Shown here in pieces: positions 17,715 to 48,305 of a DNA stretch of 64,000 nucleotides; position 1 is the stretch's first letter; the number at the start of each line of letters is the position of its first letter. This DNA is from Podarcis liolepis (taxonomy: Eukaryota), in assembly GCA_965112155.1 (NCBI GenBank), contig OZ218107.1; one strand, given 5' to 3'. A model generated the notes under the pieces. It did not search any database, was not told the DNA's origin, and was given only the letters and a program-made list of their open reading frames with translations. A program made the translations under genes and the position numbers.

Positions 17715-17884
17715 NNNNNNNNNNNNNNNNNNNNNNNNNNNNNNNNNNNNNNNNNNNNNNNNNNNNNNNNNNNNNNNNNNNNNNNNNNNNNNNNNNNNNN
17801 NNNNNNNNNNNNNNNNNNNNNNNNNNNNNNNNNNNNNNNNNNNNNNNNNNNNNNNNNNNNNNNNNNNNNNNNNNNNNNNNNNNN
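17715..17884. other. Assembly gap (170 N)
   Basis: N run. Confidence 1.
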
Positions 17885-19394: not shown

Positions 19395-19958
19395 GATGAT
19401 GATGGTGATGATGATGATGATTAAATTATACCCCACCCATCTGGCTGGGTTTCCCCAGCCACTCTGGGTGGCCTCCAACAGAATATTAAAAACACAATAA
19501 AACACCAAACATTAAAAACTTCCCTTAACAGGGCTGCCTTCAGATGTCTTCTAAAAGTCAGATAGTTGTTTATTTCCTTGACATCTGATGGGAGGGTGTT
19601 CCACAGGATGGGTGCTACTAACCAGAAGGCCCTCTGCCTGGTTCCCTGTAACTTGGCTTCTCGCAGGGAGGAAATTGCCAGAAACCCTTGGCACTGAACC
19701 TCAGTGTCCAGGCAGAATGATGGGGGTGGAGATGCTTCTTCAGGTATACTGGGCCGAGGCTGTTTAGGACTTTAAAGGTCAGCACCAACACTTTGAATTT
19801 TGCTTGGAAACATACTGGGAGCCAATGTAGGTCTTTTAGGACCGGTATAATATGGTCTCGGTGGCCGCTCCCAGTCACCAGTCTAGCTGCTGCATTCTGG
19901 ATTAATTGTACTTTCTGGGTCACCTTCAAAGGTAGCCCTACGTAGAGTACATTGCAGA
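19395..19958 (-). mobile_element. L2 LINE 3' fragment
   Basis: ORF 19618-20052 contains CNVLYVGLPLK...QLIQNAAARLVTG...HIIPVLKDLHWLPV, the L2 ORF2 C-terminus; (ATC)n tail. Confidence 0.92.
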
Positions 19959-20336
19959 AGTGCTGTGATGCCAAATGGTTCAAACACATCTGCCCTCGCT
20001 GAAGCTCAGAGAGTTGGAGCTGGACGACCTTGGGGGATGATGGGGGAGCCAAAAAGGGGACCCCAAGAATTGTCTGAACTGGTAAGCTAGGAGTAAGGAG
20101 TTGGATCGAGAAGAGGGCTCCAGTCAGGTGACAGAGAAGTGTTCTGCTCTTGTGATATAGGATGCCTCTAGCCAGACACCTCCTAGAGTCGAACTGCTAC
20201 CGCTAGCTCCTCCTGTCAGTGAGGAGCCCTCCCCTTCTGGAGAGGTGACCAGGAGTCAGTGCTGATTCCACCTCTGTCACCTAGGAAATGGAGGTGCCAA
20301 TGCAAAGAAATACCATTGGCTCAACTCACTTGAAGG

Positions 20337-20990
20337 CAGGGCTTTTTTCGGCAGGAGTTCACTGGAGCTCAGCTCCGGCACTTCTGGGCTGCATCAATAG
20401 GAGTATAGCATCTAGATCAAGGGAAGTAATAGTGCCACTGTATTCTGCTCTGGTCAGACCTCACCTGGAGTACTGTGTCCAGTTCTGGGCACCACAATTC
20501 AAGAAGGACACTGACAAACTGGAACGTGTCCAGAGGAGGGCAACCAAAATGGTCAAAGGCCTGGAAACGATGCCTTATGAGGAACAGCTAAGGGAGCTGG
20601 GCATGTTTAGCCTGGAGAAGAGGAGGTTAAGGGGTGATATGATAGCCATGTTCAAATATATAAAAGGATGTCATATAGAGCAGGGAGAAAGGTTGTTTTC
20701 TGCTGCTCCAGAGAAGCGGACACGGAGCAATGGATCCAAACTACAAGAAAGAAGATTCCACCTAAACATTAGGAAGAACTTCCTGACAGTAAGAGCTGTT
20801 CGACAGTGGAATTTGCTGCCAAGGAGTGTGTTGGAGTCTCCTTCTTTGGAGGTCTTTAAGCAGAGGCTTGACAACCATATGTCAGGAGTGCTCTGATGGT
20901 GTTTCCTGCTTGGCAGGGGGTTGGACTCAATGGCCCTTGTGGTCTCTTCCAACTCTATGATTCTATGATTTCTCTGGAAAAATAGCACTG
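20337..20990. mobile_element. hAT-type MITE split by a CR1 insertion
   Basis: Ends CAGGGCTTTTTT / AAAAATAGCACTG with 8-bp TSD CTTGAAGG (20329-20336, 20991-20998); an uninterrupted relative sits at 39422-39546. Confidence 0.85.
20381..20970 (+). mobile_element. CR1 LINE 3' fragment
   Basis: [35 protein letters not shown]...; (ATTCTATG)n terminus. Confidence 0.96.
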
Positions 20991-26259: not shown

Positions 26260-27361
26260 CTCACACGACACTATCAAAGCTATAGTTACGTAAATCCAAC
26301 TAACAGTAACACCCACAACGTAACTGGCTGTGTTTAACTATATGACTTCTTTATACATCGTATAAACATACCTCTCTTCACATTATCAAATTAAGTACAG
26401 TCATACCTCAGGTTGAACGCGCTTCGGGTTGAGCGCGTTCGAGTTGCGCTCCGTGGCAACCTGGAAGTAACGGAGTGCATTACTTCTGGGTTTCGCCGCT
26501 TGCGCATGCGCAGCCACTCAAAATGATGTCACGCACATGCGCAGAAGCAGTGAAAAGCGACACGCGCGTGCGCAGACGTGCCATCACTAGTTACGTTTGC
26601 TTCTAGATGCGAACGGGGCTCCGGAACGGATCCTGTTCGTATCTAGAGGTACCACTGTAGAAGCAATTAAAGACCAACATTTTGAACAGGAAATACAAAT
26701 AGATCAGTTCTTATATACGCAATGTCCAAACAGAAACTTTTTCGTGTTCCACGTATGTCTTTACAAATATAAGTGTCAGACGCAACAACTTTAAGAAGCA
26801 GCATTTGCAGAAAATGAAATTTTTTCTTTGTAATGTTCCACATATGCCTTTGCAAAGTATAGTTGTTGTATGCAGTTGCTGTATGCAGGTATCAGATGAA
26901 AGATACAAAAGAGCTTAACATATCAGAGACATGGAACACGTGACACAAAATCTGAGTATGCACGGCTGACAAAGCCCAGCAGGGTAAAAGAAGGTAATAT
27001 TCCAGGAATCCTTGCCTTAAGTTCTTTCGTCTGATACCTGCATACAGCAACTGCATACAACAACTATACTTTGCAAAGGCATATGTGGAACATTACAAAG
27101 AAAAAGTTCATTTTCTGCAAGTACAGCTTCTTAAAGTTGTCACGTCTGACACTTGTATTCGTAACGACATACGTGGAACACGAAAAAGCTTCTATTTGGA
27201 CATTACGTGTATAAGAACTGATCTATTTGTATTTCCTGTTCAAAATGTTGGTCTTTAATTGCTTGTACTTAATTTGATAATGTGGAAAGAGGTATGTTTA
27301 TATAATGTATAAAGAATTCATATAGTTAAACATAGCCAGTTATGTTGTGGGTGATATTGTC
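26260..27361. mobile_element. Fold-back insertion with ~340-bp inverted arms and a 13-bp flanking direct repeat (possibly Penelope-like)
   Basis: Arms 26303-26903 (interrupted by a MITE) and 27023-27360, 119-bp spacer; ACTGTCTCAGGAA at 26247-26259 and 27362-27374. The inverted repeat is certain; the family is inferred. Confidence 0.75.
26398..26657. mobile_element. Tigger-like MITE inserted in the left arm of the fold-back element
   Basis: TA|CAGTCATACCTC...GAGGTACCACTG|TA; the right arm shows the empty single-TA site. Confidence 0.9.
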
Positions 27362-28499
27362 ACTGTCTCAGGAAGACAGAGACAGCCTTTGGAGGTGGAC
27401 CAGGAGGAAAATATTCAGGCACAGCCCTCTCTATCTCGTGCTTAAGGCAGCCCCCTCATTTTGTTAGCTGGTAGGGCTGGCTCTGCAACACTCCATTAAT
27501 AATAATAATAATAAATGTAGAGGGATTTGTTGATTTTGTAATGGGCAACAATCACCTCTGTCCACAGGCTGGAATGAATTCCAAGAGATATAAATACTAC
27601 CCTGTCTCACACAGGGTTTCCCAATTGGATAAATGGGACTTTAGCATGAGTGTCCACTTGTCAGGGCTTTAGTTTTGCTTTAAATGTAGCTGTTGTTTTC
27701 CATAAATCAAAGGTATTAAGAAAGATACTTTTCTGGGCAAAATATTTTTGTTAGGAAAGTGCACTGGAAGAATTTGTAATGAGATTGTCAGACAAAATGT
27801 TGCTTGGAAAAGTTTCCTTGCCCTCTTTCCCTCCTCCTCACCTCCAAAAAAAGGCCTCATTTCTGTTTCCTATCCGAGTAGTTGTCAATTACATACTGCA
27901 GTGTTTCCCAACCTTTTTTGGGCAAAGGCACACTTGTTTCATGAAAAAAATCTCGAGGCACACCACCATGCCAGATGGGGAAAGGTCACTTTTTACTTAT
28001 GTAAAAAAAATAAAAAAAAATAGTAACAGCATAGAAGGTAATGGTAGATGACTGTTAGGGTCTCCCCCCAAATGCAGAATTCTATTAATATCTTCCTTAG
28101 CGAGCCGCGTTAACCCCTGTAATGCTTTCTATAGAGTAAGCATAGGGGACACTGGGGGATGTGGAACCAAGGGGGCAGTGGGCCAAAAGAGTTCGGGATC
28201 TACTGCTTTAAACAGAAATAAGAGCCAGTGGGTTCTTCCTTTTTTAAAGTATCGTTTCAGCGGGGACAGCAGTCCGGATTTCCAAAAAGCGGCGCTTTTT
28301 TGCGTCTGAGCAAAGAAGAGAGAGAGGGGAAAAAAGAGAGAGAGATTGATTTGTGGCTGCGCAAAGGGGGGAGGAGCCCAGGAGTAAAAGTAGGAAGGAC
28401 GAAGGGAGGGGAAAGGAAAGTTAATAGAAGGAAAGGCGGGTGGGAGAGAAAGAGAAAGAAAGAGGGAAGGAAGGGGGGAAGAGAAGTGGAAAGGAGGGA

Positions 28500-29505
28500 G
28501 ACCGAGGCGGGGGAGAAGCGTCTGGAGAGTTGCTCCGAAGTTTGGGGGGCCGCGGGGGTGGGCGCGCGTCCCAGGAGGCGGAGGCCAGCCCGGGCTGGGA
28601 GCCGCGCCGCGGCCCGGGGGCGGTAGGCGGACCGCGGCTCCTAGGATGTGGAAAGGGGACGGCGGCGCAGGGGGAGGAGACCTGCATGGCTAGGGCAGCG
28701 CGCAGGGGGAGGGGAGCGGGCCGGAGGCGGGCGAGGGGGGCCGCGATCCCGCGCGCCGCGAACATGGCCTCCTTCCCCGCGGGCCCTGCCGAGCCCCCCG
28801 GCCGGGGAGGGCGGCGCGCCCCCGCCGCCGGAGGAGAGCAGAGGCAGGAGGAGGAGGAGGACGAAGGCGCTGCCGAGGAGGCGCGCCAACTTCTGCCAAC
28901 TTCGGCGCCCGCCCCGTCGCCGCAGGCTCCTCCCGGCCGAGAGCCAGAGGACGGCGGCGGAGCAGGAGGAGGAGGATCGGGTTTGGCGACGGCTGCTGCG
29001 TCCTCTCCAAGCGCGGGGCTGGCCTCCGCTGCGCCCGATCCTCCGCGCTCGCCGCGCTTCTCGGCGGAGCAGGTCTCGTGCGTGTGCGAGGCGCTGCTGC
29101 AGGCGGGCGACCCCGGCCGGCTGGGCCGCTTCCTGGGCTCGCTGCCGCCCGACGCCGAGGCGCCGTGCCTGGAGGCGCAGGCGGGCGAGAGCCTGGCCAA
29201 GGTGCGCGCGCTGCTGGCCTTCCAGCGCGGCGACTTCGCCGAGCTCTACCGCCTGGTGCAGAGCCGGCGATGGGATGTGGGAGGGAGCTCGCTCGCCGCC
29301 CCGCGTGTGCCTATGTGGGGCACGTTACAGCCCCGTGACGTCAGCGCCACGCAGGCAGCCAGTCAGGCAGACGGCGAGAGCCACGTGCTGGGCGGCCTCT
29401 CCTCGCCGCCGCCGCCCCACCTCTCGCCGCCCGACTCGCCCGCCTCCCTCCCACGGCACACCAGGCAACGTCTCGCGGCACACTAGTGTGCCGCGGAACA
29501 CCGGT
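28500..29505. promoter_or_regulatory. CpG island carried inside the hAT element
   Basis: About 1 kb of very GC- and CpG-rich sequence in an otherwise CpG-depleted region; GC-box-like motifs upstream of the ATG. Confidence 0.8.
28764..29486 (+). pseudogene. SIX5: Truncated SIX5 copy: 168 SIX5-like codons fused in frame to 72 non-SIX5 codons (240 aa ORF), no homeodomain
   Basis: ATG in strong context (aacATGG). EEEE..EEARQLL, RFSAEQVSCVCEALLQAGDPGRLGRFLGSLPP and RALLAFQRGDFAELYRLVQSR match the recalled SIX5 N-terminus and SIX domain. Similarity stops at ~29267; TAG at 29484-29486. Confidence 0.88.
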
Positions 29506-30337
29506 TGGGAAACACTGACATACTGGAAGAAGATTGCCATTCACCATTCCACCCAGCCCTAGCCTGGGTGGAATACCCTAGCCTGGGGCTGAATAGCTGA
29601 GGTTGACTAAATTGCTTCTTGTGGCTTTCTGACTTTAAGCAAATGCCCCTACACAGCTCCACTTCAACATACATATTCAATAGCTTCCGAGAAGAAGGAA
29701 TTGTGAAACTTTGGTGAGATGGGCATTCATTCTTGATGAACATATAAAAGTGAGCCAAAGCTGAACACCTTCCACATCCTCTAGTACTACCCTGTGAAAT
29801 ATGCTGGTTTTTAATTTTTGGAGAACTGTTTTAAGCAGCATGTTTTGTATTTTTTGAAAATATATATGATCCCACCCTCCAGAAAATGTTTAGTTTCAGC
29901 TTTTGGAAGCTCAACAGATAGGTCATTAAATAGCAACTTGCTTTTCACCATTCACTGTGATCATTTTAGGACTATCTCCAACCAACATATGCTTGTCTAT
30001 TATCAAGGTGCAACAGTGTAAAAGAAGACCCTTTGTCTTATCAGTGAGGAAATGGTGTTGCTTTAGAAACCACACTTGAAATTAAATGGCGCAACATGTA
30101 AATATGAAACCTTTATAATAAAATGATACAGACGACATAGAAGTATATAAAAAATAGTTAGCAGGATTAATAATTCACTAACTATTGCATGGTATAAGTC
30201 GCTAACTAATGTGCGTTGCCTGCCATTTAATAGTGGATATATCTGAAGAAATATGGAAATTGGAATAGTTTAATAACTTTCTATATGAAAGATGATGAGA
30301 CTGCCTAAATGATTAAAAGGGAGATATGTTATAATGA

Positions 30338-30469
30338 NNNNNNNNNNNNNNNNNNNNNNNNNNNNNNNNNNNNNNNNNNNNNNNNNNNNNNNNNNNNNNN
30401 NNNNNNNNNNNNNNNNNNNNNNNNNNNNNNNNNNNNNNNNNNNNNNNNNNNNNNNNNNNNNNNNNNNNN
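30338..30469. other. Assembly gap (132 N)
   Basis: N run. Confidence 1.
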
Positions 30470-34504: not shown

Positions 34505-35060
34505 ACTGCTCCTATCATATTGCCATTACACAAAACTATGGTGCAACTGTACTTGAAATACTGTGTGCAGTTCTAATTGAACCACCTAAAAAGGTATATT
34601 GAAAACACAACCAAAATGATCAAGGGGATGGAGTAAATGAGGAAAGTTTACAGCATTTGGGACTTTTTAGTTTAGAGCAGGGTTTCGCAAACTTGGGGTC
34701 TCCAGCTGTTTTTGGACTACAACGCCCATCATCGCTGACCACTGGCCCCCCTAGCTAAGGATGCTGGGAGTTGTAGTCCAACAACAGCTGGAGACCCAAG
34801 TTTGGGAAACCCAGGTTTAGAGAAAAGGCAAGGGAGAGGTGACAGGATAGAGGTTTATAAGATTATGCACGGCATGTAGAAAGTGGATCCAACAAAGCTG
34901 AATGTTGGAAGATTCAGGACAAATAAAAAAGTACTTATTCACGCCACACATATTTAATATGGAACTCGCTCCAACAGGAGGCAGTGAGGGCCATCAACTT
35001 GGATGGCTCTAAAAGAAGATTAGACAAATTGATGGAGGACAAGGCTATCAGGGGCTAGTA
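34505..35060 (+). mobile_element. Degraded CR1 LINE fragment
   Basis: cttgaaatactgtgtgcagttct, tttagtttagag|aaaagg, gattagacaaattgatggagga; frameshifted CR1 ORF2 end. Confidence 0.78.
34678..34814. mobile_element. 137-bp palindromic hAT (Charlie-like) MITE nested in CR1
   Basis: CAGGGTTTCGCAAAC / GTTTGGGAAACCCAG termini, 8-bp TSD GTTTAGAG (34670-34677, 34815-34822), internal ggactacaa/ttgtagtcc arms. Confidence 0.92.
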
Positions 35061-36966: not shown

Positions 36967-38493
36967 TCATACTGTAGTAACTGATAAAAAAGCATTGTGT
37001 ACTTTTGTGTCGTCCGGAGATTTAGCACCATGTGTCATAAGTTCCTGGATAGTCATCCAGTTGTCCAAGATCTTCTTGTTCCTCTTTTTCATCATCTTTT
37101 TGTGACTGAGTTCAATGATGTTAATTTCCTTTTTGCCCTCACTGCTGCTTTGAGGGCTCTCTTTAAGACACTCTAGTCTGCTACGCATCATGTATTCCCG
37201 CCGCCGCCTCTGCTCCTTGGCTCGCACCAGGTGCTGCTTCCGTTCCTCTTTGCTCCAGTAACGACCCATCTTCATTTCGCTCATTGTATCATCATCCGTC
37301 GTCATCCCGCTGCGCTCCTCTTTAATCTTTAAGGCACGTTCCTTCAGGATTCTGTCTCTTACAGGTCTTTTGGTGATATACCTCGTCCCGTCGCTCCTTA
37401 TTTTCACTTTCCACTCCATCTTGGGCTCCGTACACTTCTGCGAATCTTTGCACATGTTCACTAGGCTGAGCTGGCTCTGGGCGTATTCCACAGCAGATTT
37501 CTGTTGTATCAGCTGCATATAGCTTTGATAATGCTTAGCGTGTGCAGGGATATTCCCATACCTGTATGAGGAGCCATGATATGGGGACAAATAAGGAATC
37601 TGCTCAGGGCTCTGCCTTTCTTGCTCTGTCGATTTGCTACTTTCTGAAACCGTTTCCTTCTCCTCGACAGAACTGTTTTGTTCAGCAGCTTTGGTTTTGT
37701 TTGGCGTTGTCTCCCTGCCACTCTGCCTCGAAGACAACTGGTTAGCCACAATGGTACTCCTGAGGTTTTTCCTATTGGTGATGCTAATCATCCGCTGGAG
37801 AGAACTGTCAGGGGATCGCTCCACGTTCAACGGAGTGCTTCTGCAGCTCTCTGCTGTGTTGTAAGCGCTGGAACTGTCTTTGTCCGATTTCTCTGGGTGC
37901 TCGATGATGTCGTCCAGTTTCCCCCCTGGAAGGTCTATACTGGTGTTATAATTCCTGAACGTACCACCCTGCAGTGCCCAAATGTCTCCGTACTGGTCTT
38001 TCACTTTTTGAAGCCGGTGAGCCTGCATGATGCTCTGACACTCGAGCTCAATGTTCCTCAGTTCCTCATTGAGCAGCTGCAGCTCATGCTCCACCCCGTC
38101 CTTTTTCCTTCGGTTGCACTCTATGGTACTGCTTGAGTAATACAAGTCATACTCGCCGTGCTTTCGGATCTTACACTTGAGTTCCAGCAGCTGGCGAAAC
38201 CTTTCGCAGTCCTCCTCCTGGTCACCAACAAAATCAGACTCAATGTATTCCCCAGACACTACGCTCTTGTTGCACTGGAGCTCGAGGCTTCCCAGAGTGT
38301 CCGGGCTCTGCCTCGGTTCCTGCTGGGTCTCTGGGGTCGGCTTCTTCTGCTCTTCTGGTGCATTTTCTTGCTCTGAGCTCTCGTCGTTGCGCTGGCTTTC
38401 GTCGGTGGGGCCCACTCCACTGTCTTTCTCGTTGTTGTTAGATGATGAGGTAGCAGTATCTGTTGTGCCGTCTTCCTCTTCGTGCTTTTTGGG
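36967..38493 (-). CDS. PDZRN4: PDZRN4 (LNX4) terminal coding exon, 508 aa + stop
   Basis: Acceptor tttatAG|CCC at 38494-38495 (minus) and TGA at 36967-36969; 1527 nt in frame. Motifs [56 protein letters not shown]; the C-terminus [10 protein letters not shown] matches PDZRN4 rather than PDZRN3 (recalled). Confidence 0.96.
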
Positions 38494-39575: not shown

Positions 39576-40318
39576 CAGTGGTGCCTCGCAAGACGAAATT
39601 AATTCGTTCCGCAAGTTTTTTCTTCTTGCGAGTTTTTCGTCTTGCGAAGCACGGTTTCCCATAGGAATGCATTGAAAATCAATTAATGCGTTCCTAGGGA
39701 AACCGCCTTCAGACCAGGTCCGGGGACAGTCTGTCCCCCGACCTCTTCTGAAGGCTGGGGGGGGGGGGACAAGGGCTTTTCTTCCCACTGCCAGCCTTCA
39801 GAAGGAAGCCCTTCTTCCCACCTCCCGCCCCACAAGCTCCGGGGACAGGAGGGCTTTGCTGCCGACCGCCAGCATTTTAAAAGCCCCTGCTGTCCCGGGG
39901 TGATTTTAAAATGCTGGCGGGCGGGAGCGAAGCCTCCGCTGTCCCGGGGAGATTTTAAAATGCTGGGGGTTGGCAGCGAACGCTTCGCTCCCGCCCGCCA
40001 GCATTTTAAAATCTCCCCGGGACAGCAGAGAAGTCTCCGCTGTCCCGGGAAGGCAGGCGGGGGGGAGCAAAGACTTTTGCCCCCCGCCGGCCTTCAGAAA
40101 AGGTCCAGGACCTCTTCTGAAGGCCGGCTGTGGGCGAAAGTCTTTGCTCCCGACCGCCAGCAATTTAAAACAGGTCCCCGGAGATTTCCCTATGGGCTTT
40201 CGTCTTGCGAAGCAAGCCCATAGGGAAATTCGTCTTGCGAAGCGCCTCCAAAACAGAAAACCCTTTCGTCTTGCGGGTTTTCCGTCTTGCGAGGCATTCG
40301 TCTTGCGGGGTACCACTG
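39576..40318. mobile_element. Tigger-like non-autonomous element with GC-rich internal repeats
   Basis: TA|CAGTGGTGCCTCGCAAGACGAA...TTCGTCTTGCGGGGTACCACTG|TA; repeated cgtcttgcg motifs. Confidence 0.93.
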
Positions 40319-41204: not shown

Positions 41205-43125
41205 CTCTTGCTCTCATCTGCTGCACTCCTAATGATTTTGTAGAAAATTGCTAATAGAGGTTCTCCATTTCGAATATACCAGTAAGGGGATTATATGTGT
41301 CACTGTATTTTCCCACGGAAAACATCTAGTTAAACTCTAGTCTCCCATATAGTTAAAACAAAATGGTCTGCCTTCTTTGGCCATTATGTCAAACATTTTT
41401 GTGGATCCCTTTTAACTCACCCTCCATTAACTGCACCTATTTATTTCACCTCTAATGCTAACCGCATTATGTGTCAGAGCAGTGAAGAGGGGCATGTTTT
41501 CTCCCACTCGGCCCACCACAACTAAATAGTAAAGTCATTTTGTCCCATTTCCCTTACACAATTTTTATCCAAAGTGCGCATAGTCTATTTACAATAAATC
41601 TAAGTGCACACAGCACCAGGCAAATGTGCTTTCTCCTTTAAGAGGTGTAATTACACAATTAAGCATAATGGCTAGTAATAATAAAACACGATGTGGGAAA
41701 ATATAGGGTACCCATAACAGGAAACAAAACTCTATGAGGCTACACTGTTAGTAATTGCTATTTTCCCTCTACCTAGACAGACAATGATGGACAAGGCAGG
41801 GGAATTAGTGACATACACATAAAGCCTCATTATTACCTTCAAGAGCGCAAGCCTACCAGCTAGTCTTTTATGCACAGTTGTTAGAATAAATTGATGCCAA
41901 TAGGTCACAACAGTTAGAATAAAAGCAATTAAAGTGTGTTGGAGTGTAAACTAAACTAAAAATGAAATCAAAAAGTTGACGGAAGGGTCTACCTGGCCAG
42001 TTCTGAGCCACTACGTTGATGCCTTAGTGTGTCTGTCATTAGGATTCTCAATGAGTGCTTGACAGATACCCATGTGTTTGCTGATATTATAGCTGAGCTA
42101 TAATTCTAATGTTCTCTCCCATGTTGTCCAATTTTCAGCAAGCAAGAGTGTTAAAGTTAAAATGAGAATGGTAGAATCTAAAGTTTGCCTTAAGACATGG
42201 CCTTTGGCCTGTTTTCCACTATGAGGAAAACTCTATGTGTATGATAAATGGTTTATATATATCTGTAAGTTCTAGGGCTCAGCCTTGATATTAGCCTGTT
42301 GGAGACTTGTCCCACACTGACCCACAGTTGTCTATCATACATAAGACTCTCTCCCTCCAGATGTCTCGATTCACAGTTGTTGATTCTATACTGTGACTGC
42401 ATTTTGAAGTCAACAATTAATGAGAAGGTCCAGATGAAATCTGCTGTATAGATCCTAGCCCAACCACAGCCATTGCTCAGCTTGAACTTGATACATCAGA
42501 GGCAATTTGTTAAATACCTGTCAATCTTTGGGATTAAAAGTAGGTGTGCTGTACATTGTCTCTCCCAGGGAATGAGCAGTGTGGGTCAGTGCAAACATCA
42601 GCAGCCATACACAGAAAAAAAGATTCCTCTGTAATGCTAATTTCATGCCTGGCATCTATCACAATATAGAGCAGGGGTTGGTAACCTGGGGCCCCAAAGA
42701 CCAAACGTGGGCCTTGTCCTAATTTAATGGTGGTGAGGAGACTGGAAACACAGGAAGGTAGGAGAGGAAAAAGGAAAAAAGGGTCAATTGGAAGGCGGTG
42801 TGTGTGTCATTGGGGTAGCTCCTGCAGGTAAGTGGCCAGCCTTGACCTCTGAAAAGAGTGGGCTGTCCCTTCCCTGGCAGGTTGGTGGGCATGAAGGAAA
42901 GTGACCTGCACAGTTTGGCTCTGCCCTGCCCATCACTGCTATGCAGTCCCCAACAGATTACCTCTGAGGGAATGCTGCCCTCAGAGGGGGAAAAAGGGGT
43001 TATCCCAGCCCTGATTCTATTTCTTGTGCTGGGCAAGATACAGTTTTCCTGAATTTCCTAACAAACATGCTATGACCAGCGGTTGAGGGAGCTGCCTTTT
43101 AAAAAGGCATTGTTAACTTCAACTA

Positions 43126-43704
43126 CCGTATCGCTCTATAGGGCGCACCAGACCATAGGGCGCACCTAGTTTTTTTTTGGGGGGGGGGGAAATAAAGAGG
43201 GGGAAAAAAGATTCCACCCCCCCAGCCCCAAAGAGCAAAGAAGCCAAGACATCCAGGGGGATCCATCCCGCTGGCTGTCTTGGCTTCCTCTTTAGCCAGC
43301 GGGATGGGGCAGGGTAAGCCCAAGCTTCCCCCAACCCCAGCCTCCAGAACGGGTCCGGGAGCAATGGCAAGGTTGCGTGCAACCCCGCCGTCGCTCCTGG
43401 AGCTTGCCGGGCTGGGGGCTTGAGGATAGCTGCCCGAAGCCGGGGTGCGCAGCGCTGCGCTCCCCGGGTTTCGGGCTGCAGGCTGCTATCCGCAAGCCTT
43501 GGGAGCCCGGCGGGAACTCCCGCTGCGCTCCAAAGGCTTGCGGATAACTTCCTGAAGCCTGGAGAGCGAGAGGGGTCGGTGCGCACCGACCCCTCTCGCT
43601 CTCCAGGCTTCAGCAAAAGCCTGCATTCGTTCCATAGGACACACACACATTTCCCCTTCATTTTTGGAGGTGCAAAAGTGCGTCCTATAGAGCGAAAAAT
43701 ATTG
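43126..43704. mobile_element. Tc1/mariner-type non-autonomous element with internal GC-rich palindromes
   Basis: TA|CCGTATCGCTCTATAGGGCGCAC ... GTGCGTCCTATAGAGCGAAAAATATTG|TA imperfect TIRs. Confidence 0.82.
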
Positions 43705-44339
43705 TACATTTTAAAAAACAACAACCCTGTTGCTGAGGGGTGTAAAAAGAGCAACAGAGTAAATATGCATTCCAGAGTTAGGGTCTGCCTCTTAACTGGC
43801 AAGCATTGGTGTGAATGTGACGCAGTAAGATTGAATAACAAGAGCTATGTTTTACAGCATAACCGGTTGATTCCTTTCTTTGTTCAAAATGAACAATTTC
43901 AGCACAGAACATGTCGTATTAATTGTTCTTTATGGGTGCAAATCTCAATGCTTCATGTCACTAATTAACCCACATTATGAAGGTTTGTGGGAGAATGCAG
44001 AACTGAAAGAGAAAAAGTGCCTTTGATTAAGCTAATAGGATTTTGGTGAACTGACTCTAATTCAGCAGTATTTATTACCACTGAGAAGACATGAGCTAGT
44101 CCCACCACTCTATGCAGGATCTTTCAAGAAGATTAAAAGCAGTACACAGTCACTAGCCAATCTTCAGTGTCATTTTATTTACTATTTACCTATTTACCCT
44201 GTTCTACAGCCTCAGGAAGCTCTAAAATGGCTTGCAAAATATTCTTACAATTAAATCTAATTCAAGTCCAGTATCAGGAACAACAGCAACCCTGTGCTTA
44301 TACGGAGCCACGTTTACTTTTTCTTCTGCCCTCACCCTT

Positions 44340-46894: not shown

Positions 46895-47557
46895 CAGTGG
46901 TACCCCGCAAAACGAACGCCTCGGAAGACGAAAAACTCACTAGACAAAGGAGTTTTTCATTTTCTTAGCCGCTTCGCAAGATGCATTTCCCTATGGGCTT
47001 GCTTCGCAAAACGAAGCTTGCCCCGCAAGCTCCGGGGATAGCGGGGAAGCGCAGCGCGTCTTCCCCGCTGTCCCCGACCTATTTTGAAGCAAGGGGCGGC
47101 AACGGGGAGAAGTGATCTTCTCCCCCTCCGCCCCTTGCTTCAAAAGAGGGGACAGAGGGGAAGGCGCGCGCGCGCCTTCCCCCCTGTCCCCGGACCCCTT
47201 TTGAACCAAGGGGAGGCAACAGAGAGAAGCGATCTTCTCCCCGCTGCCCCTTCCTTTGCTTTAGAACAGGTCCTGGGACAGAGGGGAAGGCGCGCGCGCC
47301 TTCCCCTCTGTCCCCGGAGATTGCGGGGCAGGCAACGGGGAGAAGCAATCTTCTCCCCGCCGCCCCTTGCTTTAAACAGGTCCGGGGACAGAGGGGAAGG
47401 CGCGCGGCGCTTCCCCTCTGTCCCCGGACGAATCCATAGGAACGCATTGATTGATTTTCAATGCAATGCTATGGGAAACCGTGCTTCGCAAGACGAAAAA
47501 CTCGCAAGAAGAAAAAACTTGCGGAACGAATTAATTTCGTCTTGCGAGGCACCACTG
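46895..47557. mobile_element. Tigger-like non-autonomous element, inverted relative to 39576-40318
   Basis: TA|CAGTGGTACCCCGCAA...TTGCGAGGCACCACTG|TA; internal ~60-bp GC-rich hairpin repeats. Confidence 0.93.
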
Positions 47558-48305
47558 TATGAGAAAATGAAAATTTACAGTACTGCAAAAAAAGAATACT
47601 CTCAATGATGACCCTCCTTCAAAACATCGATCTAGAACATCATTTCTATGTCAAAGATTGTAATTACTAATTATCTACAAATCTGAGCTCACAGGCAAAT
47701 ATAGAAATTCAAAGCAGCAATATTTTATAAAGATTATATATACATGTATATATTTACAGTGCTTATATTCTGAGGTTAGCTTTTTAACAGCACTATCCTA
47801 TGAATGTCTACTCAAATGTAAGCTCCACCGAGTTTTGTGGGACTTACCGTACTCCCAAGTATGTGTGCATAGGATTGCAGCCTAAGTCAGTGTTTGACTT
47901 CAGACAATGCAAGTACTTAGTCACATGCTTAATTTAGGCTGTAGTTCTATACACACTTAAGCTACACTGAGAGTATGGTCCAAGACCACCCAGAGAACTT
48001 CATGGCTGAACTGGGATATAAACATGAGTCTCCCCAGCCGTAGTCCAATACTCTAACCATTACACCACATCAAAAGTGCTTCTAGATCCCACTCCTGGCA
48101 GAATTAGCATAGTTGAAACAGTAACTGTAACAGGATGTGCAATCCCATTGCGGGAATTTAGAGCTACTTTTGTTATTTTGTATCAACCACAACCATGATG
48201 GCCATGCGAATTTTGCTAACAATAAGCATGGGCTGAAATGGGTGATTTGTACTTGACTGTAAATTGTATCCATAGAACACTATGTCTGGATGTGCCATTG
48301 CTGTA

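What the first reader, a model, noticed from the sequence alone, without database searches (positions are those of the whole stretch)
27891..29525. Pack-hAT: a DNA transposon that has captured the 5' end of homeobox gene SIX5
Seen: perfect 15-bp TIRs and a perfect 8-bp TSD (ACATACTG) bound a 1,619-bp element with no transposase. Inside are ~750 bp of purine/GC-rich upstream sequence and 168 codons of a SIX protein N-terminus that break off mid SIX domain, with no poly(A). Known: 8-bp TSDs with CAG...CTG TIRs are hAT hallmarks; EEARQLL and CVCEALLQAG point to SIX5; in mammals SIX5 lies next to DMPK, not PDZRN4; gene capture by TIR elements is well known in plants (Pack-MULE/CACTA) and much less often reported in vertebrates. 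Inference: recent DNA-level transduplication, probably by gap repair, that has transposed at least once or was filled in place. It may belong to a lizard Pack-hAT family that disperses developmental-gene fragments.
Basis: partly seen in the sequence, partly recalled or inferred. Interest (0 to 1): 0.95.

Follow-up and report, generated by a model that had tools for sequence, protein, structure and literature searches.

The report
Lizard hAT transposon carrying SIX5 start
A 1.6-kb cut-and-paste (hAT) transposon with no transposase gene carries the start of the developmental gene SIX5; a second copy sits at another site in a wall lizard, so it moved with its cargo, which is a real but already described kind of element.

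Summary
Perfect 15-bp inverted ends (27899-27913 / 29503-29517) and a perfect 8-bp target duplication ACATACTG bound a 1,619-bp element. It has no transposase.

Inside, an ATG at 28764 opens 168 codons. They match Podarcis SIX5 from Met1 to Arg168 (161 of 164 aligned residues identical to P. muralis SIX5). They then break off at position 70 of 113 of the SIX domain. Full-length SIX5 (921-928 aa) exists in three lacertids, so this is a fragment copy.

A P. muralis protein model (P0001) has the same SIX5 breakpoint, the same GC-rich tail and the same right end. Its flank differs, and it has lost the ATG and carries frameshifts. So the composite element transposed after a single capture.

It is a Pack-hAT. 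That kind is known in animals (Tan et al. 2021: 370 Pack-TIRs, 208 of them hAT), although multicopy cases are rare.

This scan has already noted the same kind of element with other first-exon cargos on other DNA of this genome.

Not tested:
- the DNA of the parental locus;
- the left edge of the cargo;
- the origin of the 183-bp tail;
- empty sites in other samples;
- expression.

Interest is moderate.

The parts
27891..27898 (.). left copy of the 8-bp target-site duplication ACATACTG
   Evidence: family D18 holds it
27899..27913 (+). left terminal inverted repeat CAGTGTTTCCCAACC
   Evidence: I5: 15 nt, 100% complementary
27914..28020 (+). left subterminal transposon backbone. It is AT-rich (GC 0.37, CpG o/e 0.24), holds two GGCACAC motifs (27927, 27957) and ends in an A-run. 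The inner edge is inferred from composition only.
28021..28763 (+). cargo upstream of the ATG. It is purine-rich, then CpG-rich. It is taken to be the SIX5 promoter and 5'UTR because it is contiguous with the coding part. From 28428 onward it is shared with the P. muralis copy P0001. Its parental origin was not tested at DNA level.
28764..29267 (+). SIX5 codons 1-168. This covers the N-terminal region and the first ~70 of 113 positions of the SIX domain. 161 of 164 aligned residues are identical to P. muralis SIX5. The parent continues ...QSRPFGAPHHPF; here it reads ...QSRRWDVGG.
29268..29450 (+). GC-rich tail of unknown origin (GC 0.74, CpG o/e 0.96). It has no similarity to SIX5 protein. It is either a second captured piece or family backbone. 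P0001 has it too.
29451..29502 (+). right subterminal backbone with three GGCACAC motifs (29455, 29477, 29486 on the minus strand), including the 22-bp palindrome 29474-29495
   Evidence: (I19)
29503..29517 (-). right terminal inverted repeat
29518..29525 (.). right copy of the target-site duplication ACATACTG
28764..29486 (+). open 240-codon chimeric frame: 168 SIX5 codons plus 72 codons read from the tail and the right backbone, then a stop. There is no homeodomain and no evidence of expression.

Best explanation
This is a non-autonomous hAT DNA transposon whose interior has been replaced by host DNA, that is, a Pack-hAT.

The cargo runs 1.25 to 1.43 kb. It is about 0.74 kb of sequence upstream of SIX5, then the first 168 codons of SIX5 exon 1, then a 183-bp GC-rich piece of unknown source.

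Shown:
- The ends are transposon ends. They have TIRs, subterminal GGCACAC repeats and an 8-bp TSD.
- The coding cargo is a copy of Podarcis-type SIX5 that stops in the middle of the SIX domain.
- The same composite exists at a second site in a wall lizard.

Inferred:
- The host DNA was copied in once, by template switching during double-strand-break repair or replication of a hAT copy. The models are gap filling and fork stalling with template switching.
- The composite was then cut and pasted in trans by the transposase of an autonomous relative.
- This insertion landed about 7.4 kb beyond the stop codon of a minus-strand PDZRN-like gene.
- The copies are now decaying neutrally. The fragment most likely has no SIX5 function, because it lacks the rest of the SIX domain and the homeodomain.
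For: Ends:
- TIR and TSD are exact and far beyond chance.
- All six GGCACAC motifs in the 64-kb window lie inside the element, and five lie within 65 bp of a TIR. About 6.4 would be expected spread over the whole window.
- A related 137-bp hAT MITE with an 8-bp TSD lies at 34678-34814.

SIX5 cargo:
- SIX1_SD positions 1-70 of 113 are matched.
- The best named relatives are SIX5.
- Full-length lacertid SIX5 proteins exist: P0171, P0173 and P0176.
- The fragment aligns from Met1 to Arg168 with 3 mismatches to P. muralis SIX5.
- No other part of SIX5 is in the window.

Second copy:
- P0001 (UniRef A0A670I980, P. muralis) is colinear with window 28428-29517. That span includes the breakpoint, the tail and the right TIR.
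- Its last 17 residues are absent from the window.
- The codon after the TIR needs G where the window has A.

Decay:
- There are private changes in each copy.
- 7 of 14 residue-changing differences are CpG transitions.
- P0001 has lost the ATG and has three frameshifts.

The kind is described in PMC8277862.
Against: - No DNA of the parental SIX5 locus or of other copies could be read. The 5' edge of the cargo, microhomology at the junctions and the SIX5 origin of 28021-28763 are therefore untested.
- The second copy is known only through a protein model.
- The TSD does not fit the loose hAT target consensus nTnnnnAn.
- No autonomous partner was seen.
- The window copy keeps an intact ATG and a 240-codon open frame, so a function cannot be excluded.
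Confidence: 0.88

Rival explanations
1. The cargo was filled in at this very site. An ordinary hAT copy was already here, and its interior was replaced by SIX5 DNA during break repair without any later transposition. This is the single-copy route that Tan et al. found most common in animals.
For: In-place filling keeps the old TIRs and TSD, so this locus alone cannot tell the two routes apart. PMC8277862 reports that most animal Pack-TIRs are single-copy and arose this way.
Against: P0001 carries the same SIX5 breakpoint, the same tail and the same right end next to a different flank. Two independent fillings would not share both junctions. One of the two loci could still be the birthplace.
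Confidence: 0.08
2. This is an assembly artefact: a GC-rich SIX5 contig piece wrongly joined into this region.
For: GC-rich first exons are hard to assemble. I could not lay reads. The best run holds only 0.73 of the sampled words.
Against: A misjoin does not create exact TIRs, subterminal repeats and an 8-bp duplication exactly at its borders. The same SIX5-to-tail-to-TIR junctions appear in an independent P. muralis annotation.
Confidence: 0.02
3. This is a SIX5 retrocopy, or another non-transposon duplication, that happens to sit inside an older hAT element.
For: The cargo lies within one exon, so the lack of introns says nothing either way.
Against: Retrocopies keep the 3' end and a poly(A) tail. 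This one keeps the 5' end plus several hundred bases upstream of the ATG and has no 3' poly(A). No second TSD or internal TIR lies inside the element.
Confidence: 0.02

Closest known systems
Animal Pack-TIRs of the hAT superfamily (Tan et al. 2021, Nat Commun, PMC8277862), above all the multicopy frog element Pack-hAT-N8_XT carrying the CAPSL 5'UTR
   Same: Both are transposase-less hAT elements with intact ends and TSDs, host gene 5' sequence inside, and copies at different sites with the same chimeric structure.
   Different: The host is a lacertid lizard, and that paper's text never mentions lizards. The cargo is larger: upstream DNA plus 168 codons of a developmental transcription factor. 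Only two loci are documented here, and the parental DNA was not seen.
Plant Pack-MULEs and Pack-TYPE elements (PMC8903248; the rice GC-rich 5'-end bias is from my own knowledge, not tested here)
   Same: TIR elements pick up gene fragments, often GC-rich 5' ends and sometimes several fragments at once, and then spread them.
   Different: The superfamily differs (hAT with an 8-bp TSD, not Mutator with 9-11 bp), and the host is an animal.
Other cargo-carrying hAT elements noted by this scan in the same genome (PPAT, UBE2G1, ZNF704, PRKAR2A, RANBP9, GNAL, TAL1)
   Same: By those notes they are transposase-less hAT elements carrying CpG-island or first-exon fragments.
   Different: I could not read their DNA, so a shared backbone or shared TIR with this element is untested.

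Membership tests
hAT superfamily, non-autonomous element | 8-bp target-site duplication | tested here: met
   ACATACTG on both sides is exact.
hAT superfamily, non-autonomous element | short terminal inverted repeats of about 10-25 bp starting CAG or TAG | tested here: met
   The TIR is 15 bp, perfect, and reads CAGTG.... The family rule itself is from general knowledge.
hAT superfamily, non-autonomous element | subterminal short repeats, the presumed transposase binding sites | tested here: met
   All six GGCACAC motifs of the window lie in the element, and five lie within 65 bp of the ends. Binding itself was not tested.
hAT superfamily, non-autonomous element | target consensus nTnnnnAn | tested here: not met
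   ACATACTG has C at position 2 and T at position 7. This is a loose statistical preference, not a requirement. The nearby MITE's GTTTAGAG does fit it.
hAT superfamily, non-autonomous element | an autonomous relative with the same ends that encodes a hAT transposase | not testable with these tools
   No lizard genome DNA could be searched. None is present in the window.
Pack-TIR as defined in PMC8277862 | internal non-TE sequence of 100-5,000 bp between two ends of one TIR element | tested here: met
   About 1.25-1.43 kb lies between the ends. No family consensus was available to place the edges.
Pack-TIR as defined in PMC8277862 | a unique parental copy elsewhere in the genome at 90% DNA identity or more | tested here: inconclusive
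   The evidence is at protein level only. 161 of 164 residues are identical to P. muralis SIX5, and full-length SIX5 exists in three lacertids. The parental DNA of this genome was not seen.
Pack-TIR as defined in PMC8277862 | not a retrocopy and not a segmental duplication | tested here: inconclusive
   The retained 5' end, the upstream DNA and the absence of a 3' poly(A) argue against a retrocopy. The flanks of the parental locus were not seen.
SIX5 gene (SIX4/5 class homeobox) | a complete SIX domain followed by a homeodomain | tested here: not met
   Only SIX1_SD positions 1-70 of 113 are present. There is no homeodomain in the element or anywhere in the window. It is a fragment of SIX5, not a SIX5 gene.

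The most novel reading that the evidence does not exclude
One still-active lacertid hAT family may pick up CpG-island promoters with their first exons again and again and scatter them, as rice Pack-MULEs do. Under this reading the SIX5 copy acts as a portable promoter. It would fire toward the 3' end of the PDZRN-like gene, or make a 240-residue SIX5 stub. By my recollection of the SIX1-EYA2 structure, that stub keeps the first SIX-domain helix, which contacts EYA. It lacks DNA binding, so it could act as a decoy.
Probability: 0.08. Interest if true: 0.8.

Novelty: new member of a known kind. Interest (0 to 1): 0.45.

Why it matters
Gene-carrying cut-and-paste transposons are a main route of exon shuffling in plants. 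In animals they are mostly single, immobile relics. Tan et al. found only 4 multicopy cases among their animal Pack-TIRs.

A lizard element that captured a promoter plus coding start and then moved adds a clean vertebrate case of the mobile route. Together with the other cargo-carrying hAT elements noted in this genome, it points to wall lizards as a place to study how capture happens and why CpG-rich gene starts are favoured.

On its own, this copy is most likely a decaying passenger with no effect on SIX5 function.

Tried and rejected
So there is no read support, no empty-site test and no depth.
- Run shares: 0.73 and 0.61 in one sample, 0.55 in a second sample of the same organism, and 0.47-0.51 in five other organisms. 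The flanks make up 0.59 of the stretch. This fits absence of the insertion elsewhere but does not show it, so I draw no conclusion.
- The search of earlier findings by sequence gave nothing.
- A protein search on the tail alone found only P0001. It gives no sign, in that frame and length range, that other gene models share the tail.
- The window's 240-, 266- and 348-residue ORFs are not in the protein collection.
- A composite of two hAT copies flanking SIX5 is rejected, because no internal TIR-like site exists with up to 3 mismatches.
- The match at 27612 (3 mismatches) looks like chance.
- No other copy of the element is in the window.
- Neighbour gene: the 482-residue exon at 36967-38415 (minus strand) has no Pfam or PDB hit and only a weak Atlas lead to PDZRN3-like proteins (0.76).

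Full report
**What is there.** The sequence shows CAGTGTTTCCCAACC at 27899-27913 and its exact reverse complement at 29503-29517. Each is abutted on the outside by ACATACTG (27891-27898 and 29518-29525). The element is 1,619 bp.

I counted inverted repeats of only 8 bp or more, flanked by identical 8-mers within 5 kb, in 30 shuffles of the whole window. There was one hit in total. A 15-bp pair with an 8-bp duplication is therefore not chance.

The TIRs continue imperfectly to about 39 bp (77%). All six GGCACAC heptamers in the 64-kb window fall inside the element. Five lie within 65 bp of an end, while about 6.4 are expected across the whole window. These are the subterminal repeats expected at the ends of a hAT-type element.

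A 137-bp MITE with similar ends (CAGGGTTTCGCAAAC) and an 8-bp TSD, GTTTAGAG, lies at 34678-34814. So this window has hosted hAT-type insertions before.

**Interior.**
- GC jumps from 0.37 in the flanks and left backbone to 0.76-0.80 inside.
- CpG observed/expected is 0.95-0.98 from 28301 to 29450. It is 0.13-0.30 in the flanks and 0.24 in 27899-28020.
- An ATG at 28764 opens a 240-codon frame.
- Residues 99-171 match Pfam SIX1_SD positions 1-70 of 113 (E 1.7e-13) and SIX1 in PDB 4EGC.
- No other ORF of the element hits Pfam, and 1.6 kb cannot hold a hAT transposase.

**Which gene.** A search of 1.84 billion representatives with residues 1-171 gave SIX5 proteins as the best named hits: Erythrolamprus, Sarcophilus and Sphenodon. 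A second search found full-length lacertid SIX5: P. raffonei 928 aa, P. muralis 927 aa and Zootoca 921 aa.

The fragment aligns from Met1 to Arg168:
- P. muralis SIX5: 161 identities, 3 mismatches and 6 gap columns;
- P. raffonei SIX5: 6 mismatches;
- Zootoca SIX5: 8 mismatches.

All true SIX5 proteins continue ...LVQSRPFGAPHHPFLQDLY. The window reads ...LVQSRRWDVGGSS. The break therefore lies at 29267/29268, inside the coding run and without a GT donor. No other part of SIX5 occurs in the window. SIX5 is confirmed, and a separate intact SIX5 exists in the genus.

**A second copy.** The only close hit to the chimeric ORF is P0001 (UniRef100_A0A670I980, P. muralis, 380 aa). A frame-aware comparison shows it is colinear with window 28428-29517. 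That span covers upstream DNA, the SIX5 codons, the same breakpoint, the same tail and the right TIR (...GTPVGKH).

After the TIR it reads W-SKEQNILHSTHPLTHQD. That needs G where the window has A, and those 17 residues are found nowhere in the window. So this is a different insertion site, and the composite moved after capture.

The two copies differ by 14 residue-changing substitutions, three frameshifts and one codon indel over about 1,090 nt. I estimate this at roughly 1.5-2% at nucleotide level; that figure is my inference. Seven of the 14 substitutions are CpG transitions.

Polarising against the parental proteins:
- The window copy has one private substitution (Ala147Val, a CpG transition) and one extra Glu.
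- P0001 has three private substitutions and has lost the ATG.
- Both copies share Ser52 and the same glycine run, where the P. muralis and P. raffonei SIX5 proteins differ.

This fits one capture event followed by independent decay. The capture itself is not very recent.

**Mechanism (inferred).** A non-autonomous hAT copy lost its middle and gained SIX5 upstream DNA and exon-1 start through template switching during break repair or replication. A second GC-rich piece (29268-29450) may have been added in the same event. A transposase supplied in trans then moved the composite. This follows the routes described by Tan et al. (PMC8277862). The shared junctions at two sites place this element on their rarer transposition-dependent, multicopy route.

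**Setting.** A 482-codon terminal exon lies on the minus strand at 36967-38415. It has only a weak lead to PDZRN3-like proteins. The element sits about 7.4 kb beyond its stop codon and points toward it.

**Known or new.** Tan et al. list 370 animal Pack-TIRs, 208 of them hAT, with only 4 multicopy cases, in frog and alligator. Their text does not mention lizards. My searches of the held literature found no report for lacertids.

This scan's own notes list about 60 entries for hAT elements with captured gene starts in this same genome. I treat these as unchecked leads. They mean this find is one more instance of a pattern the scan had already seen on other DNA.

**Limits.**
I worked beside those places and sent none of their letters to any search tool.
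- The following were therefore not tested: junction reads, empty sites, copy number, the parental DNA, the left edge of the cargo, the source of the tail, methylation and expression.

Noticed in passing
window 26303-27360: A near-palindrome of about 1 kb lies 540 bp left of the insertion. Its inner arms are 26657-26903 and 27023-27268 (92-98% complementary, 119-nt spacer). Its outer arms, 26303-26399 and 27264-27360, are offset by about 262 nt. It is either an inverted duplication or a foldback-type element.
   Followed up: partly
window 34678-34814: A 137-bp hAT-type MITE has TIRs CAGGGTTTCGCAAAC / GTTTGGGAAACCCAG and an 8-bp TSD, GTTTAGAG. Its ends resemble those of the SIX5-carrying element at 11 of 15 positions.
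   Followed up: partly
window 36967-38415 (minus strand): A 482-codon terminal coding exon ends in -TTV. It has no Pfam or PDB hit, and the Atlas lead is to PDZRN3-like proteins at 0.76.
   Followed up: partly
window 20288-20896 and 19618-20052: The 202- and 144-codon ORFs look to me like the C-terminal part of a CR1-type LINE reverse-transcriptase gene, judged from memory of such sequences. Pfam gave nothing firm.
   Followed up: no
window 39890-40020, 43119-43968, 47084-47608: GC-rich repeated units with internal inverted repeats recur here. An example is ...GATTTTAAAATGCTGG...CCAGCATTTTAAAATC.... Related ORF text (SRSPGF...) appears at three places. This is probably a dispersed repeat family.
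   Followed up: no
window 17715-17884 and 30338-30469; 30238-30320: There are two runs of N; they were left as they are.
   Followed up: no
window 28686-28688: An in-frame ATG lies upstream of the SIX5 ATG. P0001 reads Thr there, so a single T/C difference at a CpG position separates the two copies. Its direction cannot be polarised from these data. In the window copy this ATG extends the open frame to 266 codons.
   Followed up: partly
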